Virus record (IMG/VR): IMGVR_UViG_3300035182_002586
Span: 62,001-126,000 of that record
Strand: one strand, 5' to 3'
Length of the DNA: 64,000 nucleotides
The translations under genes and the position numbers were made by a program. A model generated the notes under the pieces. That model ran no database searches and was not told where the DNA came from. It saw only the letters and a list, made by a program, of their open reading frames with translations. This document shows positions 8,122-63,246 of the stretch, one piece after another. Numbering within the stretch: position 1 is the first letter of the stretch; each line of letters starts with the position of its first letter.

Positions 8122-8436
8122 TCAACCTTCGCGTGAGGCGTCCCACACGTCCCTTGGCACCCAACAGACGGGGGCGCCGTCACCGCGTCGGATGACTACC
8201 ATCCCGTTCTCGTCGTTCTCGTCCACCAGCTCAGCGTAGTCCCCCGCCTTCGACTCAAAGGGAGGCGTGGAGAGTACCTGCGCGACCTGCGCCCAGTCCG
8301 CAGCGGAGACGAAGGCGACCTCCGCTGCATACGTGATGGCTGCACCGCACGTGCAGACCTTCGGCAGGTCCTCGATCGGGGTAGGGTCTACCCCGAACAG
8401 AACGTCGATGTTCTCGTGCTTGAAGTTGCAGCCCAT
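8122..8436 (-). CDS. Hypothetical protein with Cys motifs
   Basis: ATG 8436 lies 10 nt downstream of a GGTGTA motif. Confidence 0.6.
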   Translation of the reverse strand: MGCNFKHENIDVLFGVDPTPIEDLPKVCTCGAAITYAAEVAFVSAADWAQVAQVLSTPPFESKAGDYAELVDENDENGMVVIRRGDGAPVCWVPRDVWDASREG

Positions 8437-8454
8437 GAGGGGTCCGTACACCAA

Positions 8455-9606
8455 CTAGGCCCACACCTCACCCCTTCGGATCTTGCCGATCAGGGACCGT
8501 GCCACTCCGAATATTTCCGCCAGAGAAGCGTCATTTTCACCTGCGGCCGAACGCGCTCGGATGGAAGCGACCCTTTCCACGTCGAGCTTCCCCGTACGAC
8601 CGGAGGTGCGCCGCGTTCGGTTCTGCTCAGTCCTGGAACCCCAACGACAGTTCGCAGGCCAACCGCGGACCGTGCACTCTGGGCACTTCCCACACGAGTA
8701 GTGGCCGCTCCGGTCGACGCGCAACAACGTGTGCTGCGGAGATGGCTTCACGCCCACGTCTTCAAGGAAGGCGGAGAATTCACCCCTCCACCGCGAGCAC
8801 ATTGTGATGCCGGCCGCGCCGTACTCAGAGAACTTCTCGTGCTTCTCGTTGAAGCATCGGGTCTTGATGCTTGCCCACGTCTTGTACTCTGGTGTCTTGG
8901 TCCCGCCGTGCGCGTAGTTGCCGTGTGCCTCACCTACAGGCACCGGACGGCGATTTAGACTCTGCTCCGCCTTCGACGCCCACCGGACGTTACCGGGTTC
9001 GTAGTTCCCGTTCGGGTTGGGGTAGCGGTCGAGGGAGTAGTCGGGGCCGGGCCTGTGTCCAACATACATGCAGAACGCGATGAAGTCGTTCACCCACGGC
9101 TCGTGGATACGAACGCCTCTACCACCCCACCCCGCATAGTTGCTACTTTTCGGGTTGAGGCAACGGTCTTTCATCGAAATCCAAGCCACATACTCGGGGG
9201 ACTTGATCATCCCGTGCTTGTAGTTCGTTGCCCGCCCGGAAGGTGGCTTGGGCATGCTCGACTTCGGGCGATGGGGGCGTCGATTGTTGTTCTGCTCTTC
9301 GCTGGTAGCCCAACGCAGATTCCCAGGCTCATACCCCCGATCGTTCTCGATTCGATCAAGAGAGTGGCGCAGCGAAGGGCGTGTTCCAACGTGCTCGAAG
9401 AAGGCGGTGAAGTTATTCACCCATCCTTCATAAATCCCGATTCCGCGTCCACCGTAGTCTGAGTACGCTTTATGGCTCGGGTTTAGACACCGAGCCTTGA
9501 TCTGCTGCCAGTAGCGATAAACTTCAGGTGCACTTATCGCCGCCTCTACCAGCCCACTGCGGGAGGCGGACCTCTCTAAGGATGTTGAATTTTTTGCCGC
9601 CGCCAA
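8455..9606 (-). CDS. HNH-like homing endonuclease with three tandem nuclease-like repeats and C-terminal HTH
   Basis: Three copies of Y..W..[IM]K.RC.N.....Y..YG.RGI.....W...F..F...VG.RP....SLDR....G.YEPGN.RW; lower GC than flanks; start uncertain. Confidence 0.75.
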   Translation of the reverse strand: MAAAKNSTSLERSASRSGLVEAAISAPEVYRYWQQIKARCLNPSHKAYSDYGGRGIGIYEGWVNNFTAFFEHVGTRPSLRHSLDRIENDRGYEPGNLRWATSEEQNNNRRPHRPKSSMPKPPSGRATNYKHGMIKSPEYVAWISMKDRCLNPKSSNYAGWGGRGVRIHEPWVNDFIAFCMYVGHRPGPDYSLDRYPNPNGNYEPGNVRWASKAEQSLNRRPVPVGEAHGNYAHGGTKTPEYKTWASIKTRCFNEKHEKFSEYGAAGITMCSRWRGEFSAFLEDVGVKPSPQHTLLRVDRSGHYSCGKCPECTVRGWPANCRWGSRTEQNRTRRTSGRTGKLDVERVASIRARSAAGENDASLAEIFGVARSLIGKIRRGEVWA

Positions 9607-10171
9607 TGGCCTCGAAGATCTTCTGGTAGGGGCGATAGACCTCGTTGTCGTCGGCGAGCTTCGTGAGGGCCTTCACCGCATTGAAGAACCGGTGTCGGAC
9701 CTTGCCTTGTGTGAGGTTCAGTAGCTCAGCCACCTCGGACTGGCAGGTCGTCTGCCACATGCCCACGAGGATGTTCACGTCGGTCTCGTCGAACGCCCCC
9801 GTCAGGTCCCGGCGCATGTCCTCTTCGGTCACGTGGGGGATCGACAGCAGGAACTTGATGCGCTGGATGCCGCGTTCCAGTCTGTAACTGATCGCCGCTT
9901 GGGTGACCTCGAAGATCTCGGCGATGTCCGCCTGCCTCTTGCGCGCGATGAAGTAGAGGTAGATGAGATCCGCTTCCCGCTGGGGGATACGGTCGAGGAG
10001 AGGGGCGATCCGGCTCTCGAAGTCCACGTCCGACAGGAAGGACGAGAACCCCTCGTCGTCCGCCACGGACTCGATCTCGTCGAGTAGGTCGTCCTCTTCG
10101 GAGCCCTCCTCGCCGGAAAAACGGTTCGCGAGTTGTGACGGATCGACGGGAATTACATAGCCAGATGACAT
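9524..10171 (-). CDS. Sigma-70 region-4-like HTH protein with two HTH motifs
   Basis: LDRIPQREADLIYLYF...QADIAEIFEVTQAAISYRLERG and QSEVAELLNLTQGKVRHRF. Confidence 0.7.
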   Translation of the reverse strand: MSSGYVIPVDPSQLANRFSGEEGSEEDDLLDEIESVADDEGFSSFLSDVDFESRIAPLLDRIPQREADLIYLYFIARKRQADIAEIFEVTQAAISYRLERGIQRIKFLLSIPHVTEEDMRRDLTGAFDETDVNILVGMWQTTCQSEVAELLNLTQGKVRHRFFNAVKALTKLADDNEVYRPYQKIFEAIGGGKKFNILREVRLPQWAGRGGDKCT

Positions 10172-10192
10172 GTGGGTGGACCCCTCGCCTGC

Positions 10193-13685: not shown

Positions 13686-13772
13686 GATCGGTTCTCCTCC
13701 GCTACACCGGGTAGACAGGGGCCCTCGGGCAGAGTGGTACTCTGCCCGTACCGAGCCGTCTGCCGATCGGAT

Positions 13773-14307: not shown

Positions 14308-15009
14308 TCAGCCCGCATCAATCGTCGCTCGCACAAATACACCCACTCGATCGTCTCCCCACGTCTCCCACAGATCGCCGGGGTCCTTCACCTTTTTGCC
14401 GCTCGGGGTTAGGGGCTGAGGGTACGACACCTGATGCACCTTGAACACTTCCCCGTGAGAACGAGCGAAGCTCTTGTTGCTCCGCTGCCCCCGTTCGTCC
14501 ATGTCGTACCCCATCCACACATCCGTCACGGTTCGCCGCATGACGGAGATCAGAGGGTCTACCACACGAGCCGTGAGGGTCGCGACGACGCCCGGGAAGT
14601 GCTTCTGGATGGGGAAGAGGTCGAACCCGCCCTCCACCAACCAGATGGAGCCGGTCTCCCAAACGTGCGGCATCGCCTCCCCAAGACCGAAGAGAACGGC
14701 TTCGGCCTTGTCCACAATGTAGTCCATATAGCCCGACCGATCACGGTCGACATGTCGAAACTGCAACCCCCGGACGGCGCCAAGGGTCGTGGTGAGGGGG
14801 AGCACGAACACGTCATCGAGCCGGCGCCCGTAGTGGGACCACTCGATGAAGTCCTTCGGCAGGTCGAGGTTGTCCGGGAGCCCGTAGAGCTGCCCGAGCC
14901 GGAAGCGGGACACCTGCGTCTCGGATACCCCCCGGGCCGCTAGTTCATCGAGAACCCGCTCGTCCACCCTTGCGTGGGCGCAGTTCACGATGTCGTCGAG
15001 CCAGGTCAT
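14308..15009 (-). CDS. DNA primase-like Toprim protein without zinc-binding domain
   Basis: L..RGVS, LFGL, WLVEGGFD, GYDMDERG, KDPGD; ATG 15009 lies 11 nt after GGTGTA. Confidence 0.8.
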   Translation of the reverse strand: MTWLDDIVNCAHARVDERVLDELAARGVSETQVSRFRLGQLYGLPDNLDLPKDFIEWSHYGRRLDDVFVLPLTTTLGAVRGLQFRHVDRDRSGYMDYIVDKAEAVLFGLGEAMPHVWETGSIWLVEGGFDLFPIQKHFPGVVATLTARVVDPLISVMRRTVTDVWMGYDMDERGQRSNKSFARSHGEVFKVHQVSYPQPLTPSGKKVKDPGDLWETWGDDRVGVFVRATIDAG

Positions 15010-15061
15010 GGCCACCCCCATACACCAGGTCGGAACGTTCCGGCGGTGTAGAACGACCGAG

Positions 15062-17026: not shown

Positions 17027-17027
17027 C

Positions 17028-20000
17028 ATGGCCGTTCGAGTCCAAGACACGATCCTCCCGAAGAACGACGCCGACTTCCCCGTCGTCGACTCATCCTCCA
17101 TCAAGGGTGGGCACCAGGAAGTCGCCAACGCCACGGCCCGGGATGCGATCACAGCCTCGCACCGCTCCATCGGCATGTTCGTCACCACGCAGGACGACGG
17201 CAAGGTGTGGAAGCTCGGCAACGACCTCCTCACCTGGACTGAGTTCACCGGTGGTGGAGGCGGCGGGTTCACCGCAGGTGGAGATCTCACCGGTACGAGC
17301 ACGAACCAGACGGTGGCCGCCATCCAGGGCATCCCCTCGATGGATCCGGTCTTCAAGGCCGATCGAGATCTCGTCGAGATCAAGAGCACGACGACGACCT
17401 CTGGCATCACCCTCAACCTGGCTTCCCCTCGCGACATTGTAAGCGACGGCACGCACATCTACGTCGCTCAGAACGGCCAGAACGCGCCTATCGCAGGGTC
17501 ACAGAACGTCTGGAAGCTCACGATGTCCGGCGGGACCGTAACCGCCGCCGTTGCGTGCGACCTCACGGCAGGCCCCTTGGGTCTCGTCACCGTGGTGCGT
17601 TGCCGAGGCATCGAGCAAGATGCCACCTACCTCTACGTCGCCACGTGGAACGCGCAGAACATCGCCATCATCGACAAGGCGACGATGACGCTCGTGGGGT
17701 GGGGCTACACAGGCGGCACCAGCGCGATGAGCGTGTGCGCCGACGGTGCAGGTAACTTCTACGCCTGCAATGACTTCAGTGAGATCTGGAAGTTTTCCAC
17801 TGCCGCGTGCATCGGTGCAGCTCCGAATACGGTGACTCCCGTACTCACGCTCCTCCCCAACGGAGGGACGTCTTTCGCAAGGTGGATCACCTACGGTGGG
17901 GGGTTCATTTGGGCTGCAAGTCCCGGTGGATACCTTGCCAAGATCGACCCCACGACGCTGACCGAAGTAACGGTCGTCACCGACGTGAACGGCGACACTG
18001 CCCTGATGGTGGCGAGGTACGCCTTCGGTGCACTGTGGGTCGCGAGCAACAACTCCACAGGTATCATCTACAAGGTCGATCCTACGACCCTCACGTGGAT
18101 CACCACCATCAGTGGGTTTGCACACCCATCCACGCCGATGTTTGGGACCATCCCGAACATCATCGAGGGTCCAGACGACCTCGGTAACCCCAATGCTTGG
18201 TTGTGGGTCTGCTCCATGGAGCAGAAGTTCGGTGGCCCCTACGTCGCAGCCGTCGATCCCGTCGGCCTTGTGCTCGCCTCCTCCACATACCAGCCGAGTG
18301 CGAACAACAGAGACGCCTACGAGGGTCTCTGTGTCGTCGGGAACTACGTGTACGCGGGAGGGTTCGATTCAAGCTGGGGACCGAGCACACCGCACATCGG
18401 CTACGTGAATGCCGTCACGAGTGCTTCGGGCAAGGTCACCGGAAGCTCCACGACGACAACTACTTGGGCCCTGGGGTACAAGCCGATCGACGGAGATCTT
18501 TCTGGTCCGATCGACAAGAACTCCGTCCACTACCTGCGTGGTGTGGCTGTACCTGATCCGGCCGGAGTCGTCACGGGGTACGTCCCCACCCTCGCCCAAT
18601 CGACCTTCCCACTGCTCAATGCGATCGCGTGGGACTCTAGCCACCAGAAGATGTGGGTGGGTCTTGCAGGAGACACTGCCGGCGCAGTCTTCTCCTACGA
18701 CCCTACAACCACCATCGGGGCCTATCACACCCCCAGTGACCCGGGCTACGCAGTAATCAGCCAATACCTGGCAGTCGCAGTCGACGCCAACTATGTGTTC
18801 GTAGCAGGAAGGAGCACTTTCGCGGGGCTCAGTGCCAACATCTTCGCTCTCGATAAGCTGACGGGAGCTGTAGTTGGTGTTGCAGCCTTCTACCGTGCTT
18901 CCAGTCTCTACTCTGACGGGACGTACTTGTGGGCAGTGACAAACCAAGGTTTCAGTGCAGGTCTAGCCAAGATCTCCATCGCGGCTATGATCGCAGCCGG
19001 ACCTACGGGTAGCCCGCCAGCCGCAACTGCATCCCTCCTGATGACCGGCCTACAAGGGGTCACAGGCGATGGTACGTGGGTCTACGTCTCCAACAACAAC
19101 ACCAGCAACATCCACCGCATCGACCCGGCTACTGCACTGGTCAGCGCGTCCTATGCAGACCCCGCAGTCAGCGGTGTCTATGGCCTGGTCATGGCTGGCG
19201 GTCATGTGTGGTGTGCAGCCTATGACCACGTACTGGAGGTAGACCCTGCGGGTATGACCCTCGTGAGTACTACCCCGCTAGGCACTTTCAACATCACGTC
19301 CATCGCATATGACGGGACCCGGGTGTGGGCGGGGTCTCTCTCTACGCGGGATATCTTCGGACTCACGGTGCCTGGGGGTGGACTCGCATACACGATCACT
19401 CCAACGGACATCTCCGATAACCACAAGAGTCTAGCCTATGACGGAACGTATCTGTGGGGGGTAGGTAACACCAGCACCACAGACGCTATCACCCGCTTCA
19501 CAGATCCGGCGGGTGTGGAGAACCTCCGTTACTTCGGCCCGTGGCGTCTCGACTACGCTGCTGCTGGTGGGACGCTTGCAGGCGATGTCACTGGTGCTCC
19601 GGGCGCCAACACGGTCACCCGTCTTCAAGGCTTTACGGTCAACAGTGCAGTCCCAACGGTAGGTGCTGCTCTAGTCTGGCAGTTCCCTGCGGGATGGACG
19701 CCGACCACGCCGGGAGGCGACCTCTCAGGTAGTTCGTTCGCAACGCCAACGGTGGCTAGGATCAACGGCTACACCGTCAGCGCAACGCCTACGCTCTCTG
19801 GGCAAGTTCTCACGTGGAACGGTTCGGCGTGGGTCGCTCAGGCTGTCGGAGGGTCCAACCCCGGCACGCCGCAGACGGGCAACAACTACGCCCCCGTCAA
19901 GGTCAACGTCTCGGGTGCGGCCATCCAATCGTGGATCAACCTGAACGGCGGCACGGGCTACCGCTCGGATCTCGTGGACGGTGACGTAGACGGGATGCTC

Positions 20001-22652: not shown

Positions 22653-22689
22653 CGATCGTCAGTGTACACCAGCGGTGTAAGAAGAGGGT

Positions 22690-24029: not shown

Positions 24030-24092
24030 CACACGTGTAGGTAGATAAGCAGAACCATCGACAAGAGCCCGGTGGCCGGTGTATTTCGGGGT

Positions 24093-24800
24093 ATGACCGA
24101 AGCAGGCATCCTCACCGGGCACGAGATTGTCGAGCAACACAAGGCCGGGCGCATCCGCATCTACCCCTTCGTACCGGAGCGCGTGAACCCCGGCTCCTAC
24201 GATCTCACCCTCGGCTCGAAGGTTGCCGTCTACAAGAACCTGGTGGTCCCCGACTTCGAACCCATGGAGAAGGACGGCATCCCGGGGGAGTGCATCCGCG
24301 TCCAGCATGACGTGGACCCTCACATCCCGTTCCGCGCCAGACCCGGTATCAACTGCCTCGACGCTGCGATGGCGAACGAGATCGCCGTCTACGAGATGGA
24401 CAACCGTGGATTTCTCCTGCGACCCGGCATCGGTTACCTGATGCACACGGCGGAGCGCGTGCAGTCGGATTCGTTCGTCCCTGTGATCGACGGTAAGTCG
24501 AGCATCGGCCGCCTCTTCATCCTGGTCCACTTCACGGCCGGGTACGGAGAGATCGGTTTCGACGGGCAGTACACGCTGGAGGTCATGGCGACCCACCCTG
24601 TCATCATCTACCCCGGAGAGCCGATCGCACAGATCCGCTTCCACACGACGCGGGGCAAGGTCGAGTCGTACCAGGGGAACTACCAAGGACAGGACGCCAT
24701 GGGACCGGTCGCGTCGAAGTCTCACAAGCAGATCGAAGCCTGCGGTCTCCGAGTCGGGCATCACTCGCAGCCGATGGATCGATCCCGCGACGACGTGTAG
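24093..24800 (+). CDS. dcd: dCTP deaminase
   Basis: VNPGSYDLTLG, GKSSIGRL, HFTAGYGEIGFDGQYTLE, PIAQI.F, Y.G.YQGQ. Confidence 0.9.
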   Translation: MTEAGILTGHEIVEQHKAGRIRIYPFVPERVNPGSYDLTLGSKVAVYKNLVVPDFEPMEKDGIPGECIRVQHDVDPHIPFRARPGINCLDAAMANEIAVYEMDNRGFLLRPGIGYLMHTAERVQSDSFVPVIDGKSSIGRLFILVHFTAGYGEIGFDGQYTLEVMATHPVIIYPGEPIAQIRFHTTRGKVESYQGNYQGQDAMGPVASKSHKQIEACGLRVGHHSQPMDRSRDDV

Positions 24801-24992: not shown

Positions 24993-25373
24993 ATGCGGAC
25001 CCGAGTGCTCATCATCGGCCCCGAAGAGCGGAACGCGGCCGCGAAGCTCACAGCCTTCGCGCTGACGAGCCCCTTCACCCCTGGACCGGGCGTGAAGGCC
25101 CCCGGAGACGACCCCCGACACTCCATGCAGCTCGGGGACTTCCGCTGCGTCTTCTCGTTCACTCGCATCGACGGCAAGCTCTACCGCCACCTGTCCGTGG
25201 GCATGCTCGACCAGAAGGCCCCCCTCCCTAACCCGCTAGCTGTCCAGGAGATCGCCCACCTGATGGGGTTCGAGGGGTTCCTCTCGGAGTGGCGTGTGGG
25301 CGTCATGCGTACTCACATTTCGATCCTCCAGCCGATGGATCAGGAGCCGGCACCCACTGTAATCGAGGCATGA
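24993..25373 (+). CDS. Hypothetical protein
   Basis: ORF coupled to the next gene (ATGA); RHLSV...P.P pattern. Confidence 0.6.
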   Translation: MRTRVLIIGPEERNAAAKLTAFALTSPFTPGPGVKAPGDDPRHSMQLGDFRCVFSFTRIDGKLYRHLSVGMLDQKAPLPNPLAVQEIAHLMGFEGFLSEWRVGVMRTHISILQPMDQEPAPTVIEA

Positions 25374-27034: not shown

Positions 27035-27053
27035 GCGCCCGCAGGTACACCGG

Positions 27054-28061: not shown

Positions 28062-28552
28062 GCCGCCCCTCTACACCGCCCGTCCACCTCTTTCAGGAGA
28101 GTCGGGAGGCGGAAGTCCCCGTGCATCCCCCGAACGAGGTCTGCGGCGGCTTCTGCGGCCATCCCAGCGGCCGTCACGTACAGGGGGCGGGTGCTAGTCC
28201 CCCGCAGGACCTCGATGGCCCCCTTCGATTCGTGGAAGTGCGTCTTGGCCACGCCTACGACGGGGACGGTCTCCCCGAGCGCCTCGTAGAGTCGGGCGCC
28301 AAGGCCAGGTTTCTCCCCGAGCCAGGCGTACCCGTCGACCACGACCGCACTCAGAGGGTCACGGAGATGCCCGAGAACCTTGAGCAAGCACGGAAGCTCG
28401 CGCCGGTAGAATTCTCCCGGCTGGTAGTCCTCGACCGGGCTGACGTGCTCGATGATCACGCGCTGAGGCTTCGCGTCCATCCAGCCGTTGGCGATGACAC
28501 CCGCAGCTACGGCGAGTGTGCCTCGATAGTCGACGTCCAGGATCGCAATCAC
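28058..28552 (-). CDS. nfi: Endonuclease V
   Basis: LDVDY, YQPGEFYRRELP, VVDGY, PVVGVAKT, PLYVT, R.PTLLKEVD. Confidence 0.88.
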   Translation of the reverse strand: MIAILDVDYRGTLAVAAGVIANGWMDAKPQRVIIEHVSPVEDYQPGEFYRRELPCLLKVLGHLRDPLSAVVVDGYAWLGEKPGLGARLYEALGETVPVVGVAKTHFHESKGAIEVLRGTSTRPLYVTAAGMAAEAAADLVRGMHGDFRLPTLLKEVDGRCRGAA

Positions 28553-28573
28553 AGGACGGGCAGTACACCAGGC

Positions 28574-31137: not shown

Positions 31138-31298
31138 CGCGACGAGTCACGGGTCAAGAGGGCCTTCTCTACACGTACGGTTTCGCAGGGGTTTTTCGGT
31201 AGGGTCGTGGGCGTCGGCATGCGTCCGGGATCTTTTTTCAGGGTCGACGATGGATCGGCGTCGTCGTCGCTCTGTACTTACACCGAGCGAGGGATGGC

Positions 31299-32480
31299 AT
31301 GAGCGAAACGCAGTCTGAACTGGTCGTAGTCGGCAAGGGTTCGATCACCGCTGCATCGGCGGAAGAGGAGTGGTCCGAGACGGACCTCGACACGGACGTG
31401 ACGGCAGAGGTGGGCGAGGACGACAACGACAACGACACGGCTGCGCTTGCGCTCGTGACGCCGCCCCCGGCGACGCGCCCGCGTGGTGCGTCGCTCGACA
31501 CGAACGAGGGCCGTCCGTGGCCGGCGGGCGTGCCGCGCAACTACGACGAGATGTACCAGACGTGGGGGAAGTACGTCTCGAACCTCATCGGCCGGTACAA
31601 CAAGGTCGATCGCAACTTCGAGGAGCTGGTCCAGTGGATCTGGGAGAAGCTCCTCCAGTCGAACCTCCTGGAGAAGTACGTCGACCGTCTCTACGACTCG
31701 CAGGAGACCGTCTCGAACTTCGAGGCGTGCCAGTTCGTCGGCCTCGCCTGGAGCGTCGAGCGCATCGGCCCGGACGGCAAGAAGCGCATGGATCGCGGCC
31801 CGTGGTACAAGCGCATGTGGCGCTGCTACTGCGGCGAGCCGATGGGTCGCAAGGGGAACATCCCGCTCGGCCCCGACGGTCAGCGGCTCCGGAAGAAGTC
31901 CGGCTGGATGCCGAAGATCGTCAAGGGGACGTGGGCCTCGAAGGAAGCTCTCCTCCTCCGCAGCGACGTCATCAAGTTCAAGGAACAGCTCGACGAGGAG
32001 CGCATGGAGGCGGCCCTGGAGGGCAAGGTCCTGCGCATCTGGCAGAGCATCGGGGAGTCGAAGATCCCGATCCCGGCGTCGACGGACGCGAACTTCGCGG
32101 GCTACTTGCGCCGCGCCGTCCGCAACCACTTCTGCAACTTCGTCCGCCACAAGGAGCGCAAGGAAAAGGAGCGGCTGCACGACCACTTCTTCACCTTCAC
32201 GAACCGTCTGGCGCAGAACGAGGGCGCGCAGTGGGAAGACCTGCTCGTCGACGAGCGGAGCGGCGGGGCCGCCGAGGCGTCCGCCGAGCTGAACGCGGCG
32301 CTCGCCAAGATGCTGCCGCACATCCCGGAGAAGTTCCAGAAGTCGCTCTTCGACCTCCTCATGGAGGGCGTGACCCTGGAACACTCGATCAACCGTCTGG
32401 ACGCGACGCCTGAGGAGAAGCGCACGATGTCGCGCGCCGTCTCCGCGGTGCGGCCGATCAGACGGCAGGCGGGCTACTGA
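31299..32480 (+). CDS. Phage sigma-factor-like protein with a large insertion in region 2
   Basis: YDEMYQTWGKYV...FEELVQWIWEKL [insert] FAGYLRRAVRNHFCNFVR; C-terminal L.KML..IPEKFQ....L...G.TL. Confidence 0.6.
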   Translation: MSETQSELVVVGKGSITAASAEEEWSETDLDTDVTAEVGEDDNDNDTAALALVTPPPATRPRGASLDTNEGRPWPAGVPRNYDEMYQTWGKYVSNLIGRYNKVDRNFEELVQWIWEKLLQSNLLEKYVDRLYDSQETVSNFEACQFVGLAWSVERIGPDGKKRMDRGPWYKRMWRCYCGEPMGRKGNIPLGPDGQRLRKKSGWMPKIVKGTWASKEALLLRSDVIKFKEQLDEERMEAALEGKVLRIWQSIGESKIPIPASTDANFAGYLRRAVRNHFCNFVRHKERKEKERLHDHFFTFTNRLAQNEGAQWEDLLVDERSGGAAEASAELNAALAKMLPHIPEKFQKSLFDLLMEGVTLEHSINRLDATPEEKRTMSRAVSAVRPIRRQAGY

Positions 32481-33073: not shown

Positions 33074-33090
33074 TACACCGACGTGGTGTA
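33074..33090. promoter_or_regulatory. Back-to-back GGTGTA motifs serving coaE and the methyltransferase (representative of more than 20 copies)
   Basis: TACACC-gacgt-GGTGTA, 10 and 12 nt from the two divergent ATGs. Confidence 0.7.
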
Positions 33091-43231: not shown

Positions 43232-43260
43232 TGGATCGGGTTGGGGTCGCATTGTACTAG
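43232..43260 (+). promoter_or_regulatory. TGGATC-N17-TACTAG promoter-like motif (third class)
   Basis: Same layout at 31251 (+), 60273 (-) and 60717 (-). Confidence 0.55.
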
Positions 43261-43264
43261 AGAC

Positions 43265-43507
43265 ATGCCGACCACCAAGTTCAATTGCAAGACCCCGGGC
43301 GACGCAACCAAGCTGATCGAGACCGTGAAGAGCCACATGGCTCGTGGCGCGGCGATCTCAAGCTACAGCTTCCCGGGCGGCTTCGAGAACACGAGCGCGC
43401 CGGTCCTCGTCACCGTCACCGGCATGACCGCCGTGGTGTGGGACGTGGCCCGCAAGAGCGGCGCCGAGCTGCTCCCCAACCTCAAGCCGTGGGAGAAGCA
43501 GTCGTGA
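43265..43507 (+). CDS. Hypothetical protein
   Basis: Downstream of a TGGATC-N17-TACTAG motif. Confidence 0.6.
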   Translation: MPTTKFNCKTPGDATKLIETVKSHMARGAAISSYSFPGGFENTSAPVLVTVTGMTAVVWDVARKSGAELLPNLKPWEKQS

Positions 43508-50529: not shown

Positions 50530-50660
50530 CTTGCTGTCCCTGTCGTACAACAAGAAGCGCAGAGGGGGTGGACCGGACATACCCTGTCCGACCCCCGCGT
50601 TTCAGGTCGTTCGGGAGCCTACCGCCGGTGTAAGGGACGGGCCAAGGAGGCAAACACCGA

Positions 50661-51530
50661 ATGTCGAACGCAACCAGCTACAAGGTGGCCGAGTCACTGT
50701 ACCTCGTCCGCCAGGAAGTCGCGAAGGGGAACCAGGTCGCGAAGCCGGTCGAGATCCCGACCAACCACATCCTGGAGATCGACTGCTCAGGGAGCATGTC
50801 ATGGGATCTCCCCAAGATCCGCGAGCAGGTCAAGAAGAAGCTGGTGAAGCTGCTCAAGGAGGGGGACACCCTCTCCATCGTCTGGTTCAGCGGGCGTGGA
50901 CAGTGCGGGGTTCTCCTGGAAGGTGAGCCGGTCGCGACGCTGGCGGACCTCAACAACGTGAACGCTGCGGTCGATCGCTGGCTCAAGCCGGTCGGCATGA
51001 CGGGCTTCAAGGAGCCGCTGGAGCTGCTCCCGGGCCTGATCGAGCGTCTCGCGAAGAAGTACCCCAAGAACGTCAACTCGCTGATGTTCCTCTCGGACGG
51101 CTGCGACAACCAGTGGTCGCGCCCCGACGTGCTCAAGGCGATGGAGAAGGCGGCCGGCGGGCTCTCAGCCACCACGGTCGTCGAGTACGGCTACTACGCG
51201 GATCGTCCACTGCTCACGGCGATGGCCGAGCGCGCGGGTGGGAGCCTCATCCACGCGGCGGGGTTCGACAAGTTCGAGCCCATCCTCGAAGCCTCGCTCA
51301 AGAAACAGGTCGTCGGCGGCAAGCGCGTCGAGATCGACGTGAAGGGTGACGTCATCGGCGGCTTCGTCTGGATGGAGGACAACGGCGACCTCGTGACCTA
51401 CGGGATCGCGGACGGCAAGGCGCACGTCGCCGAGCAGACGCAGGCGGTGTGGTACCTCTCGCCGACTCCTATGGGGAAGGTGGAGGGGAACCTGAGCCAG
51501 TTGGCGGAACAGGCGTCGAAGGCGGCTTGA
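50661..51530 (+). CDS. vWA-domain protein, N-terminal part of a probable split gene
   Basis: IDCSGSM, GMTGF, FLSDGCDN; AAGGAGG RBS. Confidence 0.85.
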   Translation: MSNATSYKVAESLYLVRQEVAKGNQVAKPVEIPTNHILEIDCSGSMSWDLPKIREQVKKKLVKLLKEGDTLSIVWFSGRGQCGVLLEGEPVATLADLNNVNAAVDRWLKPVGMTGFKEPLELLPGLIERLAKKYPKNVNSLMFLSDGCDNQWSRPDVLKAMEKAAGGLSATTVVEYGYYADRPLLTAMAERAGGSLIHAAGFDKFEPILEASLKKQVVGGKRVEIDVKGDVIGGFVWMEDNGDLVTYGIADGKAHVAEQTQAVWYLSPTPMGKVEGNLSQLAEQASKAA

Positions 51531-52110
51531 GCCGCTCTTCCCGTCTACGCCACGTCCGAATGTGATGGCAGTTCGCGCAGACAAGCTCGCACTTCGCGAC
51601 TTCGGCCTGGAGGACTGCCATCGAGTACGCACGGTTCTTCATGCGAGCGATGTCCATCACCTTCCCGGACTTCACATGATCGAACTGCATCGCAGCGTGG
51701 TGGAACGTACCCCCACAGTCTGTGCAGGGCTTTGATTTCAACTCGCGGATGAACGCTCGTTGCTCATCTCGAACGCGGGAAGCTCGTTTCTTCGAGCGTT
51801 CCATCTGCTCTCCCTTGTGACGGGCGTACCAGGCTCGCCGGTAGGGACGAAGGCAGATCGTACAGGTTCGCTGGTACTTCCCCTTGGCCTTGTTGGCGAC
51901 AGGAAAATCCCCCAAGGGCTTCCATTCCTTGCATCGCCAGCATCGTCGCAAGCCAGGGTTCGCGGTGCTTTGGGTAGAACACGTCGGCCGTTTGTGCCCT
52001 GCCTGCCCGCACAACCCGCACTTCTGGTGGGGCCCAGGCTCTAAGGTCTTCGTTTGATAGTTCACACCGAACACGGTGTATAAGAGATTTAGGAAAGCAA
52101 AGGTTCCCAT
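51469..52110 (-). CDS. HNH endonuclease with N-terminal zinc knuckle
   Basis: CGLCGQAGHKRPTC; CTDCG...FDHV...KCELVCANCH; start uncertain. Confidence 0.8.
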   Translation of the reverse strand: MGTFAFLNLLYTVFGVNYQTKTLEPGPHQKCGLCGQAGHKRPTCSTQSTANPGLRRCWRCKEWKPLGDFPVANKAKGKYQRTCTICLRPYRRAWYARHKGEQMERSKKRASRVRDEQRAFIRELKSKPCTDCGGTFHHAAMQFDHVKSGKVMDIARMKNRAYSMAVLQAEVAKCELVCANCHHIRTWRRREERLKPPSTPVPPTGSGSPPPSP

Positions 52111-53596
52111 GCCCTCGAACGACCCCGTTTCCGCTGCTTACGCTGCTGTCTCGCTTTTCAGCGTTCGTGCGAAGCCCGAAGTGGTTCTCCCTCTGCTTGG
52201 TGCGTTGGGGGATAAGGCTCTCCTGGAGCGTTTCGGAGGGCTTTTCGGCAAGCAGAAGTACTCGGATTTCATGGCGGAGACGAAAGCCGCGTCGTTCGAC
52301 CCGAAGCTCCGTCTCATCAAGGGGTACGATCCGAACGCCCTGCCTCGGGACGACGCGTTCACCGTCCTCGACATGCTCCGCCTGCTCGCGTCCGACGAGG
52401 ACAACAAGGTCCTCCTCGACCACGAAGCGTTCAAGTACAGCCGCATCTCACGCGGGCGCGTCGACGCGTTCACCGTCCTCACGGCGGACGAGCAGGCGGA
52501 GGTCGAGCGCCTCACCGAGGAGCTGACCAAGGCCAAGAAGGATGCCAAGAAGGTCGCCGAGCTGAGCGCGAAGATCGCGGCCATCTCCAACAAGCCTGCG
52601 CCGCTCAAGTTCGAGGCGGACCCGGCGCCCGACGGCTACTCGGTCTCCAACCTCACGTACAACGAGGAGCACCCGAACGTCAGCCTGCTCGTCCGCAAGA
52701 CCGGTACGGTCGACATCTCAGGCCGTCTCCCGGCGGAGATCACCGGCGTCCCGGCCAAGTTCCCGACGTTCATCTTCCGCAACTACGCAGTGGTGAAGGA
52801 TGGGCTCGTCAACGTCGAGGTCCTCCCGACCAAGCTCTCAGCGGCGACGCTCGCGAAGCTCTTCGAGCTGCACAAGGCGGGGAAGTTCTCCGACGAGGTG
52901 GTGAAGTCGGACGGCAACGTCGTCCTCCTCAACTTCAAGTCGCTGCCGGTCATCAACCGCACGATGGTGAAGGCGACGTCGGCGAAGGCCCTCTTCGAGA
53001 ATGAGTGGGCGCTCACGCGCATCCAGGCCGAGCAGAAGGTCTACAAGTCGTTCGCCAAGGAGAAGTTCGGGACCAAGAAGTCCGCGGGCTTCGAGGAGAC
53101 GTACGGTAAGGCGGCGGCCGACTGGCTCAAGGAGCAGGGCTTCACCGACTACTCGGGCTTCTCGCCGAAGAGTGTCCAGGCCGAGTCGACCGACGTGTAC
53201 GTCGCCAAGGAGCTGTCGATCGTGATCAAGGGCTTCTCAGCGATCCCGAGCCTCAACGACTTCAAGAAGCAGGCGGCGAAGGGGAAGTTCACCCCGTCGG
53301 CGCAGCTCATGAAGGACGCGGCCGATGCCGTCGAGAAGTTCCTCGCTTCCGACGACTACAAGAACGGCGGCGACCCGGCGTTCGAGAAGTGGCTCAAGGA
53401 CAAGGACAAGGCGCTCGACAAGACGCGCCGCGCCCTCATCGCCAACAAGGCGCAGCAGATCTTCTGCGTGGTAGTAGGTCAGACGTGGCCGGTGGAGTTC
53501 GCGTCAATCGACGAAACGCAGTTGAAGATCACCACTCCGGAGGGTAACGTCCTGGAGTGCGAAGTGAAGATGCGAGATCGCGAGATCAAGATCTAA
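52109..53596 (+). CDS. Hypothetical protein, probable C-terminal partner of the vWA gene
   Basis: Same strand and codon style as 50661-51530; own GGTGTA motif at ~52075. Confidence 0.7.
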   Translation: MPSNDPVSAAYAAVSLFSVRAKPEVVLPLLGALGDKALLERFGGLFGKQKYSDFMAETKAASFDPKLRLIKGYDPNALPRDDAFTVLDMLRLLASDEDNKVLLDHEAFKYSRISRGRVDAFTVLTADEQAEVERLTEELTKAKKDAKKVAELSAKIAAISNKPAPLKFEADPAPDGYSVSNLTYNEEHPNVSLLVRKTGTVDISGRLPAEITGVPAKFPTFIFRNYAVVKDGLVNVEVLPTKLSAATLAKLFELHKAGKFSDEVVKSDGNVVLLNFKSLPVINRTMVKATSAKALFENEWALTRIQAEQKVYKSFAKEKFGTKKSAGFEETYGKAAADWLKEQGFTDYSGFSPKSVQAESTDVYVAKELSIVIKGFSAIPSLNDFKKQAAKGKFTPSAQLMKDAADAVEKFLASDDYKNGGDPAFEKWLKDKDKALDKTRRALIANKAQQIFCVVVGQTWPVEFASIDETQLKITTPEGNVLECEVKMRDREIKI

Positions 53597-54625: not shown

Positions 54626-54646
54626 CGCGCCGGTGTACCCAAGACC

Positions 54647-55042: not shown

Positions 55043-55239
55043 CTCTACCCTGGAACTCCGGCGTCCTCGCCTCGTGGTCGATCGTGGGGATGAACCACTA
55101 CCACCTCGGGGGCGTCCGCCGCCTCTTCGTCGCCATGGTGAAGGACGGCCGGTGCATCAAGGCCGAAGGGGCGGACGAGGCCGGCGTCTTCGAGGAGCTG
55201 ACCAAGCTGGCGATGGATCCCCCACGTCCAGTACTGTAG
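55039..55239 (+). CDS. Small hypothetical protein
   Basis: ATGA coupling; WSIVGMNHY...LFVAM.KDG.CI. Confidence 0.6.
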   Translation: MTLPWNSGVLASWSIVGMNHYHLGGVRRLFVAMVKDGRCIKAEGADEAGVFEELTKLAMDPPRPVL

Positions 55240-56058: not shown

Positions 56059-56085
56059 CGAGGGTTCCGGTGTAGTCACTGGCCC

Positions 56086-58317: not shown

Positions 58318-58355
58318 GACGGGGAGCCTACACCGCGCCGGTGTACAAGGCTCGC

Positions 58356-60239: not shown

Positions 60240-60392
60240 GACCCTCCTACAACGGGAGGCGGGCGGTGATCCATCCGTCGGTGTACGATCGCAGCATGTC
60301 CGTGCGAGCTTCCACTGCCGTCGCGGTCGCCATCGGCGCCCTGCTCGTGATCGTCCTGTTCCCGCAACTGGTGCGGCTCCGGATCAGTTGAG

Positions 60393-60508: not shown

Positions 60509-60682
60509 CTACTTCGACGGGTTCAGGTTCGGACAGTAGGGGTTGCTGTGCGTGCGGAGCGGGTGCCCGAAGCAGTGACACGTGGCCTCGACGGAGGTGC
60601 CGCCGCCCTCGAAGTGGGCGACCTTCACCTTGACCCCGTTCTTCACGGTCATCTCGACCCTCACGAGATTGCTCTGTCCCAT
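60509..60682 (-). CDS. Small hypothetical protein
   Basis: GGAGG RBS, TGGATC-class motif; C.C..H...H...C. Confidence 0.55.
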   Translation of the reverse strand: MGQSNLVRVEMTVKNGVKVKVAHFEGGGTSVEATCHCFGHPLRTHSNPYCPNLNPSK

Positions 60683-60740
60683 GCCTCCCTGTACCACGTG
60701 ATGTGAGGGGCGATCCATCCGGCCGGTGTAGAAAGGGGGC

Positions 60741-61229: not shown

Positions 61230-61253
61230 TAGTAGTAGGCGTTCTGGTGTCTT

Positions 61254-61327
61254 GCTCCCGTGGCCGAGTGGTTCAGGCGGGCGACTTTAAATCGCCGTCA
61301 ACGTGGGTTCGAGTCCCACCGGGGGCG
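61254..61327 (+). tRNA. Ochre suppressor tRNA, anticodon TTA at 61287-61289
   Basis: Full cloverleaf: GCTCCCG/CGGGGGC, GCC-GAGTGGTTCA-GGC, GGCGA-CTTTAAA-TCGCC, GTGGG-TTCGAGT-CCCAC; discriminator G; no encoded CCA. Confidence 0.85.
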
Positions 61328-61857
61328 CTCCTCTTCAAGTGGTTGCGGACAGATGATTCGGCTACCCCAAGCTGTCTGACTACTTCACTCTTTGAGGTCT
61401 TTGCAATCAAGTCCAGAAGCTCCTCCATCGGAGGCCATGCGGCACGCTTAGCTCTAGGCTTTCGGTGCCCACACGAACGACACTGCACACTGGACTTGGC
61501 GATCGTAGTCCCGCACCGACAGGTCTTGTGTGTGGCCTTCGCGATGCTCCGCCCACAGAACGTTGCGGTCTGTGAGTCGCAGTTAGGACACAGAAACCTC
61601 AAGTTTTCTAGTCTGTGATCACGATTCACACCGTTGATATGGTCCAGCCGAAGCACGAGAGGTTTTCCTCCCCACTCGGGCCCAAGCTGACAGCCAACAC
61701 AGTGGGATGTGTCCAGGGCCAGGCGCGCGATAGCGTTGCGCACGTAGGCTGCCCCTCCACCAGAAGCAGAGGGTCGACCTAGAGCACGAAGAATTGCAGT
61801 GACACTAGCGTGCTCTCGCACAAGCACCACCAGGGTGTCGTCAGAGATGGGTTACAT
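61273..61857 (-). CDS. HNH endonuclease overlapping the tRNA antisense; upstream ATG at 61857 followed by in-frame TAA (alternative GTG start 61830)
   Basis: LRLDHINGVNRDHRLENLRFLCPNCDSQT; C-terminal HTH. Confidence 0.75.
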
Positions 61858-61895
61858 CGAGTTTAGTGGCGGTATAAATGACCTACTAAACTCGA
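61857..61895. repeat. 11-bp-arm inverted repeat at the start of the HNH gene
   Basis: tcgagtttagt-N17-actaaactcga. Confidence 0.75.
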
Positions 61896-61923
61896 CCCTC
61901 TCGATCAGGTGTACCATCCCCCC

Positions 61924-62274
61924 ATGCAGGATCGAAGCTACCTCGCCGATCTCACCGAGGCACAGCTCAAGGGTGTCGCAGGTGCACTGGAGGCGCGGAT
62001 CAGGGACTCCAAGAAGAAGGCCACGCAGGCCCTCTCCAAAGACCCCGAGCTGATGAAGAGCTGGATCGCCACAATGTCGGCGGTCCCCGCTACGACCTCA
62101 GAGGAAGAAGACGCGAAGGAACTGGTCCGCAAGGCCCGCGAGGACCGTCGACTAGCCTTCGAGAAAGCCCTCGTCGAGCACCCGGAGGCGTACGTCCTCT
62201 ACCACATGGCGAACTACCTCGTCGGTCTTAGCGAGGCCGTCCGCAAGGAGCGGAGCGAGAGGGCTCGCAAGTGA
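61924..62274 (+). CDS. Hypothetical protein
   Basis: GGTGTA 10 nt upstream. Confidence 0.65.
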   Translation: MQDRSYLADLTEAQLKGVAGALEARIRDSKKKATQALSKDPELMKSWIATMSAVPATTSEEEDAKELVRKAREDRRLAFEKALVEHPEAYVLYHMANYLVGLSEAVRKERSERARK

Positions 62275-62275
62275 C

Positions 62276-62902
62276 TCAGTGGTAGTCGTAGCGAAGACCG
62301 AGCTGATCCCACTCGTGCGTCAGCTCTTGCATCGTCATGTTCGCGGCCTTGGAGATGTTGTCCTTGAGCCAGCCGTAGAACAGGATGCCGTCCTTCTTGC
62401 TCACGGGTGAGTAGAGGGTGTCCTGACGGTAGCCGTGGGCCGCCTTGCCGGGCGCCTCGATGACGGTGCTGTTGGTCACGTGGAAGTCGTGCGGGCTCGC
62501 CTGGATGCGGACGATGGTGCCGTCCGGGAACTTCTTCTCCAGCTTGATGGTGGTCCCCGGCGGCTCGACGTCGATCCCACGGAGTTCCCGCTCGTGGGTC
62601 TCCATCAGCTCCGGGTGGTCCGCCTTGATCTTCTCCAGGTGTGACTTCGCCTGGTCGTAGTTCATGTGCAGGATGGAGGTGACCGCCTGCTTGAGGATCC
62701 GGTCCGCCATCTCGTCGTTGAGCGTGTGCGGCATCACCGTCAGCTCACGGACCTTCTTGCCCCGCTTGCCGGCATTCGTCATGTCGGTGATCCGAACGCT
62801 CCCGTGGAAGCGGTGGATCTTGAGGTGCTCGGTGAAGGCGTGTTGCCCCACGTCCAGGCTGGCGGCAAGGAACTTGGCAGCGACTCGGCGGGCGAGGTCC
62901 AT
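62276..62902 (-). CDS. Hypothetical protein with RVAAKF leader
   Basis: MDLARRVAAKFLAAS; TTATC 13 nt upstream. Confidence 0.7.
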   Translation of the reverse strand: MDLARRVAAKFLAASLDVGQHAFTEHLKIHRFHGSVRITDMTNAGKRGKKVRELTVMPHTLNDEMADRILKQAVTSILHMNYDQAKSHLEKIKADHPELMETHERELRGIDVEPPGTTIKLEKKFPDGTIVRIQASPHDFHVTNSTVIEAPGKAAHGYRQDTLYSPVSKKDGILFYGWLKDNISKAANMTMQELTHEWDQLGLRYDYH

Positions 62903-62925
62903 GCCCACACCCCGTGATAAGACCT

Positions 62926-63222
62926 CTATCGCCCTACGCTGACCAGGGCGTCGTCGATCTGGTCCGGGTCCAAGCGGAAAGGACCCGGACCCCCTGCCCC
63001 GGGAGCCCAACCGGCCAGGACCCCTCGCCGGACCAGGGCCTCCACCTCGGTCGTTCCGATGGCGTCACATCGACGTACATCCACCGTGGCCACGAGGCAG
63101 CGCCCCGGGAACGCCTCCACCTCGATCGTCACGTTGAGACAGGGGGCCGCCCTCTTGGTGACCAGGAAGCGGTAGGAGGTGGTGTCGACGGTCAACCGCC
63201 GGCTGTGGTTAGGCAGGGTCAT
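62926..63222 (-). CDS. Hypothetical protein
   Basis: GGTGTA 11 nt upstream. Confidence 0.6.
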   Translation of the reverse strand: MTLPNHSRRLTVDTTSYRFLVTKRAAPCLNVTIEVEAFPGRCLVATVDVRRCDAIGTTEVEALVRRGVLAGWAPGAGGPGPFRLDPDQIDDALVSVGR

Positions 63223-63233
63223 GCCCTAGCTAC

Positions 63234-63246
63234 TACACCTTTTATC
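63234..63246. promoter_or_regulatory. Divergent GGTGTA (minus) and TTATC (plus) motifs
   Basis: tacacc-tt-ttatc between two divergent genes. Confidence 0.55.

What the first reader, a model, noticed from the sequence alone, without database searches (positions are those of the whole stretch)
8436..63239. Window-wide GGTGTA motif 9-12 nt before start codons: phage promoter class making leaderless mRNAs
Seen in sequence: GGTGTA precedes starts at a fixed 9-12 nt gap, usually with no Shine-Dalgarno. Plus strand: 15045, 22674, 24078, 33085, 34664, 41417, 46139, 54632, 56069, 58340, 60725, 61908. Minus strand (TACACC): 8447, 15021, 22665, 27046, 28072, 28564, 33074, 58329, 63234. Several are back-to-back pairs between divergent genes. 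Where the gap is longer (13703, ~50627, ~52075), a purine-rich RBS-like sequence appears. Inference: TA is the start of a -10 element, placing the transcription start at or near the ATG. Most accessory genes would then be individually promoted and leaderless, probably under a phage sigma factor. Leaderless translation could also bypass host Shine-Dalgarno-dependent control.
Basis: partly seen in the sequence, partly recalled or inferred. Interest (0 to 1): 0.75.

Follow-up and report, generated by a model that had tools for sequence, protein, structure and literature searches.

The report
Huge-phage promoter abutting start codons
A 529-kb uncultivated phage puts a short conserved DNA word (YGGTGTA) exactly 9-12 bases before about 130 of its start codons. 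This is most likely a promoter element that yields messenger RNAs with no leader, an arrangement already known from Thermus phages but here with a new motif and a new candidate phage sigma factor.

Summary
All 21 listed sites check out. GGTGTA occurs 42 times in the window against 13 expected. In the whole 529-kb phage genome, 132 of 332 copies have an ATG 9-12 nt downstream, the highest share of 3,442 hexamers (median 4%).

The motif is YGGTGTA, with no -35 element and no T at the sixth position of a TANNNT box. Genes behind it lack a Shine-Dalgarno, start with ATG 90% of the time and usually have C at -1. The spacing matches the "-10 box 6-7 bp before the ORF" rule shown experimentally for leaderless genes in Deinococcus-Thermus and Thermus phages. 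The motif also lies 13 and 15 nt before two tRNA genes, so it is a transcription signal rather than a translation signal.

It is conserved at the same spacing in 18 related metagenomic loci (51-65% GC). All of these carry a divergent sigma-factor gene, which the window also encodes at 31299-32477.

No transcription start was mapped, because no RNA run was listed. "Leaderless" and "phage sigma" therefore remain inferences. "Most genes" is overstated: the figure is about 27-30%.

The parts
8447..8452 (-). class-1 motif GGTGTA, gap 10, ATG at 8436 (ORF 8122-8436, 104 aa)
15021..15026 (-). class-1 motif, gap 11, ATG at 15009 (ORF to 14308, 233 aa); back-to-back with 15045
15045..15050 (+). class-1 motif, gap 11, ATG at 15062 (64-codon ORF to 15256)
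22665..22679 (.). divergent pair TACACC-N3-GGTGTA; ATG 22652 (-, 61 aa) and ATG 22690 (+, 134 aa); 37 nt from ATG to ATG
24078..24083 (+). class-1 motif, gap 9, ATG 24093 (235 aa)
27046..27051 (-). class-1 motif, gap 11, ATG 27034 (64 aa)
28072..28077 (-). class-1 motif, gap 10, ATG 28061 (85 aa)
28564..28569 (-). class-1 motif, gap 11, GTG 28552 (164 aa)
33074..33090 (.). divergent pair TACACC-N5-GGTGTA; ATG 33063 (-, 201 aa) and ATG 33103 (+, 304 aa); both motifs conserved at the orthologous place in relative L001
34664..34669 (+). class-1 motif inside the 3' end of the upstream gene, gap 10, ATG 34680 (95 aa); conserved in L001
41417..41422 (+). class-1 motif, gap 9, ATG 41432 (290 aa); conserved in L001
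46139..46144 (+). class-1 motif, gap 11, ATG 46156 (204 aa)
54632..54637 (+). class-1 motif, gap 9, ATG 54647 (131 aa)
56069..56074 (+). class-1 motif, gap 11, ATG 56086 (245 aa)
58329..58345 (.). divergent pair TACACC-N5-GGTGTA; ATG 58317 (-, 99 aa) and ATG 58356 (+, 135 aa)
60725..60730 (+). class-1 motif, gap 10, ATG 60741 (162 aa); directly abuts the -35-like block of a class-2 promoter on the other strand
61908..61913 (+). class-1 motif, gap 10, ATG 61924 (116 aa)
63234..63239 (-). class-1 motif, gap 11, ATG 63222 (98 aa)
13703..13708 (-). GGTGTA with a 17-nt gap holding GGAGGAG before ATG 13685 (clamp-loader-like gene); leadered or read-through case
50627..50632 (+). GGTGTA with a 28-nt gap holding AAGGAGG before ATG 50661
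31299..32477 (+). divergent sigma-70-family gene (393 aa): sigma2 split by an insertion of about 115 aa, plus a sigma4-like C-terminus; candidate reader of the motif
31252..31298 (+). class-2-like promoter (GATGGATC-N14-CTGTAC) with a 21-nt leader holding GAGCGAGGGA, in front of the sigma gene; same arrangement in L001
9524..10171 (-). 215-aa protein with two sigma-70 region-4 type HTH domains and no sigma2
25337..25372 (+). class-2 promoter GGATC-N17-GTA-N8-ATG (ATG 25370)
43233..43267 (+). class-2 promoter GGATC-N16-GTA-N8-ATG (ATG 43265, 80 aa)
60680..60716 (-). class-2 promoter GGATC-N17-GTA-N9-ATG (ATG 60682, 57 aa)

Best explanation
YGGTGTA is the core, -10-like element of a phage-specific promoter class that has no -35 element. 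RNA polymerase starts about 10-11 nt after the A of the motif, at or within a few bases of the A of the start codon. The mRNAs therefore have no 5' leader, or a leader of at most about 4 nt, and no Shine-Dalgarno, and are translated as leaderless mRNAs.

The host's multisubunit RNA polymerase is the likely enzyme, since no phage polymerase was found. It is probably redirected by a phage-encoded sigma factor. The best candidate is the divergent sigma-70-family protein at 31299-32477. A second class (GGATC-N16/17-GTAG-N7-ATG) works the same way but has a -35-like block.

Shown: the motif, its position lock, the lack of SD, its conservation in relatives, its presence before tRNA genes, and the presence of sigma-like genes.

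Inferred: the start site, the leaderless state, and which factor reads which class.
For: 1. Position lock and rank: 132 of 332 copies have an ATG at gap 9-12, the top value of 3,442 hexamers.

2. Geometry: if TA is taken as the first two bases of a hexamer, the ATG lies 6, 7, 8 or 9 positions past the hexamer in 23, 49, 39 and 21 cases. This matches "-10 motif ~6-7 bp upstream of the ORF" shown experimentally for leaderless genes in Deinococcus-Thermus (PMC12340547). It also matches start sites 6 bp past the -10 element in the mostly leaderless Thermus phage Lalka27a (bioRxiv 10.64898/2026.04.20.719267). The few canonical promoters in this genome abut an ATG in the same way: TTGACA-N17-TAATAT-N7-ATG and TTGACC-N16-TAGGAT-N6-ATG.

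3. No SD: 19% against 15% at random positions and 42% for other genes. Start codons are ATG in 90-100% of motif genes against 60-72% elsewhere. C at -1 is 72-93% against 44-50% elsewhere.

4. The base just after the motif is G in 54 cases and C in 49, so the start is not there.

5. The motif lies 13 and 15 nt before tRNA-Thr and tRNA-Ser genes. About 0.2 such cases are expected by chance.

6. There are 11 divergent pairs with 34-52 nt between the ATGs, which leaves no room for leaders.

7. Conservation: in 18 related loci (237 kb, 51-65% GC) GGTGTA is again the top hexamer, with 40 of 162 copies at gap 9-12 before an ORF. The figure is 3 of 73 in unrelated viral loci and 3.4-4.4% in three bacterial MAGs. 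Orthologous sites are kept while the flanks diverge.

8. Sigma: 25 of 60 members of the family match Pfam Sigma70_r2. The top structural matches are nearly all sigma factors, at Z 5-7.2. No T7-like or multisubunit polymerase was detected.
Against: - No transcription start was mapped.
- The sixth hexamer position is not T (20 of 121), which is unlike every well-studied sigma-70-type -10 box.
- TG abuts TA directly, one base out of register with the classical extended -10.
- In some sites with a gap of 14-18 nt, the SD-like run lies within 10 nt of the motif. It would then be upstream of the proposed start (13703, genome 470914). Either those genes are read from upstream promoters or the start lies closer to the motif there.
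- The GTA-to-ATG distance differs by 2 nt between class 1 (10) and class 2 (8). Both cannot start exactly at the A if GTA is read in one register.
- The link between the sigma and the motif rests on loci that were chosen because they carry the sigma gene, so it is not an independent test.
- The structural Z-scores are below the tool's caution line.
Confidence: 0.72

Rival explanations
1. The motif is a promoter element read by the host's own sigma factor, housekeeping or alternative. No phage sigma is involved, and the phage simply copies the host's promoter grammar for leaderless genes.
For: Canonical -10-like boxes (TAGGGT, TAGAGT, TAATAT, often with TG directly before TA) also sit 5-8 nt before about 17 other starts in this genome. 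The geometry is that of ordinary leaderless promoters (PMC12340547). The host is unknown.
Against: The motif lacks the -7 T that group-1 sigmas need. It is kept unchanged in relatives from 51% to 65% GC, which probably infect different hosts. Three Planctomycetota MAGs, the nearest LigA relatives, show only background levels of 3.4-4.4%. The phage carries at least three sigma-related genes.
Confidence: 0.15
2. The motif lies in the transcribed 5' UTR and acts on translation or RNA fate. It would be a phage-specific ribosome- or protein-binding site, like the start-associated sequences of Cluster K mycobacteriophages, or a processing site.
For: The position is locked to start codons, as for SAS (PMC3203893). 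GGUG can pair with CACC of the 16S tail. The phage invests heavily in translation, with 53 tRNAs and a tmRNA.
Against: The spacing from GGUG to the AUG (11-14 nt) is far beyond the 6-9 nt seen for real SDs in this genome. The motif occurs 13-15 nt before two tRNA genes, which are not translated. In divergent pairs with 34-39 nt between the ATGs, the promoters would have to lie inside the neighbouring gene. The sister class 2 has a clear two-block -35/-10 layout with a 16-17 nt spacer.
Confidence: 0.07
3. GGTGTA is the -6..-1 part of a promoter for a phage-encoded single-subunit or other non-canonical RNA polymerase. Transcripts would start right after the motif and carry a 9-12 nt leader without an SD.
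For: This layout resembles T7-type promoters, which are conserved up to -1 and AT-richest at the end. In sites with a gap of 14-18 nt, the SD-like run would then be inside the transcript.
Against: No T7-like (PF00940) or beta/beta' domains were found, and no DFDGD-type catalytic motif in any long ORF. The base after the motif is C as often as G, which is poor for an initiating nucleotide. A fixed leader of about 10 nt with no SD has no obvious reason to be so tightly constrained.
Confidence: 0.05

Closest known systems
Leaderless promoters of Thermus phages phiYS40 and Lalka27a (late -10 element TAGGGT)
   Same: These are phage-specific promoter classes defined mainly by a -10 element. Start sites lie 6 bp past it, most transcripts begin at the A or G of the start codon, promoters are dense with few terminators, and divergent promoter pairs occur in short intergenic regions (bioRxiv 10.64898/2026.04.20.719267).
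   Different: The motif here is YGGTGTA, with no T at hexamer position 6. The genome is 529 kb and uncultivated, and the host is unknown. A candidate phage sigma of a new family is present, and start sites have not been mapped here.
-10 motif (TANNNT) adjacent to ORFs in Deinococcus-Thermus, and leaderless genes of Actinobacteria
   Same: A -10-like element sits 6-7 bp before the start codon, there is no SD, and about a quarter to a third of genes are affected (PMC12340547; PMC3898074; PMC4633059).
   Different: Those elements are read by the cell's housekeeping sigma and need T at positions 1 and 6 and A at position 2. Here position 6 is free and four upstream bases (GGTG, preceded by Y) are fixed.
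T4 late promoters (TATAAATA read by gp55), from my own knowledge
   Same: A single -10-region element with no -35, read by a very divergent phage sigma on host core polymerase, in front of many genes.
   Different: No gp55 homologue was detected. T4 late mRNAs have leaders and an SD. The sequence is unrelated.
ECF (group 4) sigma promoters, GGAAC-N16/17-GTC/CGT
   Same: The class-2 promoters found here (GGATC-N16/17-GTA) share the two-block layout and spacer. The candidate sigma's closest structural matches include many ECF sigmas.
   Different: The -35 block lacks the AAC core. Class 1 has no -35 at all. The candidate sigma has a large insertion in sigma2.
Start-associated sequences (SAS) of Cluster K mycobacteriophages
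   Same: A short asymmetric repeat locked a few bases before many start codons of one phage clade and absent from host genomes (PMC3203893).
   Different: SAS holds an SD-like GGAG core 3-8 bp from the start and was proposed to act in translation. GGTGTA has no SD core, sits further away and also precedes tRNA genes.

Membership tests
sigma-70-type -10 box of leaderless genes (TANNNT) | T at position 1, A at position 2 and T at position 6 of the hexamer | tested here: not met
   TA is invariant by construction, but position 6 reads A15 C32 G54 T20 in 121 sites
sigma-70-type -10 box of leaderless genes (TANNNT) | hexamer ends 6-7 bp before the start codon | tested here: met
   The gap after TA is 10 in 49 sites and 11 in 39 sites, which is 6 and 7 bp past a TAnnnn hexamer; compare PMC12340547
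sigma-70-type -10 box of leaderless genes (TANNNT) | no Shine-Dalgarno between the element and the start | tested here: met
   19% have a good duplex, against 15% at random positions and 42% for other genes
leaderless mRNA | primary 5' end at the start codon, or at most about 5 nt upstream | not testable with these tools
   No RNA run was listed for this phage
extended -10 promoter (TGnTATAAT) | TG one base upstream of the hexamer (-15/-14) | tested here: not met
   TG abuts TA directly (GGTG-TA) in every copy
T4-type late promoter / gp55 | a single -10-region element with no -35 | tested here: met
   Information content is about 0 from -50 to -2 relative to the motif
T4-type late promoter / gp55 | a gp55-family sigma and dependence on the sliding clamp | not tested
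   No search for a gp55 family was run; clamp dependence needs biochemistry
ECF sigma promoter (applies to class 2) | two blocks 16-17 bp apart, with the -10 block about 6-9 nt before the start | tested here: met
   GGATC-N17 (27 sites) or N16 (14 sites), then GTA-N8-ATG
ECF sigma promoter (applies to class 2) | AAC core in the -35 block | tested here: not met
   The block is GATGGATC
sigma-70 family (protein 31299-32477) | sigma2 domain (Pfam PF04542) over the curated cut-off | tested here: inconclusive
   The protein itself scores E 0.024, 14.8 bits, below the 24-bit cut-off. 25 of 60 family members match, best 1.8e-7. Structural matches to sigma2 domains reach Z 5-7.2, under the tool's caution line
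sigma-70 family (protein 31299-32477) | C-terminal sigma4-type HTH | tested here: inconclusive
   Weak NCBIfam ECF hits over residues 261-385 (E 7e-4 to 0.015). The profile hits GerE/LuxR-type HTH in the PDB at E 0.1-0.7. The model has a helical C-terminal domain at residues 322-386
Start-associated sequence (SAS) | SD-like core pairing with the 16S tail, 3-8 bp from the start | tested here: not met
   No GGAG core; the gap is 9-12 nt, whereas real SDs in this genome sit 6-9 nt from the start

The most novel reading that the evidence does not exclude
A previously undescribed branch of the sigma-70 family carries an insertion of about 115 aa, possibly DNA-binding, inside sigma2. It reads the -35-less element YGGTGTA on host core polymerase. 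With a second two-block class, it drives a transcription programme built largely on leaderless mRNAs. This sigma-promoter pair is conserved across a clade of large uncultivated phages whose genomes span 51-65% GC, so it would be a self-contained expression system that is portable between hosts.
Probability: 0.35. Interest if true: 0.7.

Novelty: new variant of a known kind. Interest (0 to 1): 0.55.

Why it matters
If the reading holds, three things follow.

1. It gives a ready rule for finding true start codons and transcription units in a clade of huge phages whose genes are almost all ORFans.
2. It shows that leaderless expression, so far documented for Thermus phages and a few repressor genes, can carry roughly 30% of the genes of a 529-kb phage (classes 1 and 2 together).
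3. It offers a compact 7-bp promoter with a candidate cognate sigma. This pair could be tested as an orthogonal expression module and used to ask how a sigma2 domain reads a -10 element that lacks the canonical -7 T.

Tried and rejected
- **RNA evidence.** The look-up of sequencing runs listed four DNA runs (sediment, microbial mat, groundwater) and no RNA run.
- **Relatives in IMG/VR.** None were found by protein search. The class-2 DNA pattern gave only 22 single, chance-level hits. Those loci served as controls.
- **Flanks of the original 620-kb contig.** They could not be reached.
- **Host.** Alignments A3 and A4 were too divergent for a genome-contig scan. The LigA scan gave a best hit of only 39% identity, to a Planctomycetota MAG. 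Those MAGs do not use the motif. The host remains unknown.
- **Phage RNA polymerase.** No T7-like, Rpb2_6 or Rpb1_2 domains and no DFDGD-type motif were found.
- **phrog_2426.** I suspected a polymerase subunit, but it is a VWA-domain protein of Vi1-like phages.
- **Structure of the sigma-like protein.** With 3 sequences the model was poor, at pLDDT 49.5. Foldseek against the PDB gave nothing significant.
- **ESM Atlas.** The look-up of the 273-aa ORF next to the region-4 gene was uninformative.
- **Complex prediction (sigma plus promoter DNA).** It was not folded and is not evidence.
- **Canonical signals.** Sigma-70 promoters and intrinsic terminators are not enriched in 22-42 kb.
- **Handle search of relatives' whole contigs.** Not possible.
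Full report
**What the window is.** The window is bases 62,001-126,000 of a single 528,957-bp IMG/VR virus record. CheckV rates it 100% complete, it is labelled "provirus", and its GC is 63.9%. Most proteins are ORFans. There are weak HK97-capsid and terminase matches elsewhere in the genome. The genome also holds 53 tRNA genes, a tmRNA and a TAA-suppressor tRNA. The same DNA occurs in sediment, microbial-mat and groundwater metagenomes. I treat it as a huge tailed phage of an unknown bacterial host.

**The observation.**
- The window holds 42 copies of GGTGTA against 13.06 +/- 3.87 expected, and no shuffle out of 100 reached 42.
- The genome holds 332 copies. An ATG follows at gap 9/10/11/12 in 23/49/39/21 of them, and 121 of these open an ORF of at least 60 codons.
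- Ranked against every hexamer with at least 30 copies, GGTGTA comes first of 3,442. Of its copies, 39.8% have an ATG at gap 9-12, against a median of 4.1%.
- It is also the most enriched hexamer upstream of my own crude gene calls, 101 observed against 3.4 expected.
- Allowing GTG starts and requiring coding potential gives 136 sites in the genome and 20 in the window, out of about 640 and 73 genes. "Most genes" is therefore too strong.

**Anatomy of the motif.**
- The logo is Y-GGTGTA-S.
- There is no information upstream, so there is no -35 element.
- Nothing is conserved between the motif and the start except C at -1, in 90 of 121 sites.
- If TA begins a hexamer, its sixth base is T in only 20 of 121 sites, so this is not a TANNNT box.
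- The base directly after the motif is G in 54 sites and C in 49. That argues against initiation at that position.

**Evidence that the genes lack a leader.**
- A good anti-SD duplex is found in 19% of motif genes, 15% of random positions and 42% of other genes.
- The start codon is ATG in 90% of motif genes, against 60-72% elsewhere. Y at -1 is 83%, against 58% in SD-led genes.
- Where the motif is 22-45 nt from the start, a GGAGG-type SD usually appears 6-10 nt before the start codon. In a few sites with a 14-18 nt gap, including 13703, the purine run lies within 10 nt of the motif, which the model explains only by read-through from upstream.
- The genome has 11 divergent pairs with only 34-52 nt between the two ATGs. 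Four of them are in the window.

**Geometry compared with known systems.** Taking TA as hexamer positions 1-2, the ATG lies 6-7 bp past the hexamer in the two modal classes. That is the spacing reported and experimentally validated for the -10 motif of leaderless genes in Deinococcus-Thermus (PMC12340547). It is also the spacing of start sites in Thermus phage Lalka27a, whose transcripts, like those of phiYS40, are mostly leaderless and whose late class has its own -10 element, TAGGGT (bioRxiv 10.64898/2026.04.20.719267). Within this genome, canonical TTGACA-N16-18-TANNNT promoters are very rare, six in 529 kb. Two of them abut an ATG at 6-7 nt. About 17 further genes have a TANNNT box 5-8 nt before the start.

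**Transcription or translation signal.** GGTGTA lies 13 nt before tRNA-Thr(UGU) at genome 139975 and 15 nt before tRNA-Ser(UGA) at 150469. The latter is the first tRNA after a 560-nt gap. About 0.2 such cases are expected by chance. tRNA genes are not translated, so this favours a promoter. Real SDs in this genome sit 6-9 nt from the start, which is much closer than GGTG.

GATGGATC-N13/14-(T/G)GTAG(A/T)(G/A)GG-N2-C-ATG can be written as GGATC-N17 (27 sites) or N16 (14 sites), then GTA-N8-ATG. There are 53 strict sites, mostly at 420-528 kb, with some in the window at 25337, 43233 and 60716(-).
- It has a clear two-block layout with an ECF-like spacer.
- ATG is invariant and C at -1 is found in 93% of sites.
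- Its purine block ends 2-3 nt from the ATG, too close to act as an SD.
- The GATCCATCC that the window shows just upstream of GGTGTA at 60280 and 60725 is the -35-like block of class-2 promoters on the other strand.
- The sigma-like gene at 31299 has a class-2-like promoter followed by a 21-nt leader with an SD-like run, and the same is true in relative L001.

**Who reads the motif.** No T7-like or multisubunit polymerase domains, and no catalytic DFDGD-type motif, were found. Three sigma-related genes were found.
- **Window 31299-32477 (393 aa).** It gives weak sigma hits on its own. A profile search found 203 related clusters. Of 60 aligned members, 25 match Pfam Sigma70_r2, best 1.8e-7. 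With that alignment the AlphaFold model reaches pLDDT 81.5. The Foldseek-independent structure search returns almost only sigma factors at the top (sigma H, RpoE, SigB, SigI, AlgU, SigK, sigma-28, SigW and others) at Z 5-7.2. Sigma2 is split by an insertion at about residues 136-250, and a helical C-terminal domain follows. These Z values are below the tool's own caution line, so I call the assignment probable, not proven.
- **Window 9524-10171.** It has two region-4 HTH domains and no sigma2.
- **Genome 479437-479790.** This is a 117-aa region-3.2/4 protein (Sigma70_r4, 1.5e-17; RpoH/RpoS-like) directly after a 273-aa ORFan.

**Conservation.** Loci carrying homologues of the 393-aa sigma were fetched from Logan, ENA and JGI assemblies.
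- In L001 (about 60% protein identity, syntenic with window 30-42 kb) the motifs are kept at orthologous starts, including the divergent pair, while the flanks diverge.
- Pooled over 18 loci (237 kb, 51-65% GC), GGTGTA is again the top hexamer. 40 of 162 copies sit 9-12 nt before an ATG opening an ORF of at least 40 codons. Y precedes the motif in 39 of those 40 and C is at -1 in 25 of 40.
- Independent gene calls on those contigs start at the motif-proximal ATGs.
- Controls are at background: 3 of 73 copies in 22 unrelated viral loci, and 3.4-4.4% of YGGTGTA copies in three Planctomycetota MAGs, with no excess of the motif itself.
- The loci were chosen through the sigma gene, so the co-occurrence is suggestive and not an independent test.

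**Conclusion.** The best reading is a phage-clade-specific, -35-less promoter element placed so that transcription begins at or within a few bases of the start codon (confidence about 0.7). That a phage sigma reads it is plausible, with a concrete candidate (about 0.4-0.5). The architecture itself is known from Deinococcus-Thermus and their phages. The new parts are the motif, its lack of the -7 T, the scale (about 190 promoters of two classes in one genome), the huge-phage clade and the candidate sigma family with an insertion. I rate it a new variant of a known kind.

Noticed in passing
genome-wide; in the window at 24776-24799, 25337-25372, 31252-31298, 43233-43267, 55215-55238 (+) and 60680-60716, 60248-60272 (-): A second promoter-like class: GATGGATC-N13/14-(T/G)GTAG(A/T)(G/A)GG-N2-C-ATG. 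There are 53 strict sites, concentrated at genome 420-528 kb, also locked to the ATG, with extra conserved C at -17 and -15. The copy at 60248-60272(-) is followed only by a 3-codon ORF (ATG TCC TAC TGA).
   Followed up: partly
window 61254-61328 (+): A tRNA with anticodon UUA, a TAA suppressor, found by ARAGORN and confirmed as a tRNA by Rfam at 55 bits. TAA ends only 36 of 639 crude gene calls. Possible stop-codon read-through or recoding was not examined.
   Followed up: partly
genome 138785-176528 (outside the window): 52 further tRNA genes and a tmRNA (tag ANDNGTVITALKAAA), all on the + strand, in a 38-kb region.
   Followed up: partly
window 50661-51530 and 52109-53596 (+): One PHROG family (phrog_2426, a VWA-domain protein of Vi1-like phages) is split here into two genes, matching profile positions 16-255 and 262-736. 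They are separated by about 580 bp that hold no Rfam family. This could be an insertion, an intron-like element or a genuine split; it was not resolved.
   Followed up: partly
window 9524-10171 (-): A 215-aa protein with two sigma-70 region-4-type HTH domains and no sigma2 domain. Its role is unknown; it could be a transcription factor or a sigma-appropriator-like protein.
   Followed up: partly
genome 478614-479790 (locus L027 8614-9790): A 117-aa sigma region-3.2/4 protein (RpoH/RpoS-like, Sigma70_r4 1.5e-17) starts one base after the stop of a 273-aa ORFan in another frame. This may be a split sigma factor.
   Followed up: partly
genome about 290905-290950 (outside the window): Three tandem copies of ATATGGAGGGTAAG directly before the ATG of a 256-aa gene.
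   Followed up: no
G001 (Planctomycetota MAG) contig C257: Five YGGTGTA-N9-12-ATG matches fall on one contig of this MAG. Three have near-identical spacers, so they may be a repeated gene family or a mis-binned phage contig.
   Followed up: no
window 17028-22463 (+): An 1811-aa ORFan with no Pfam hit and no match in 50,697 phage records. Only its first 87 residues match a PHROG of unknown function.
   Followed up: no
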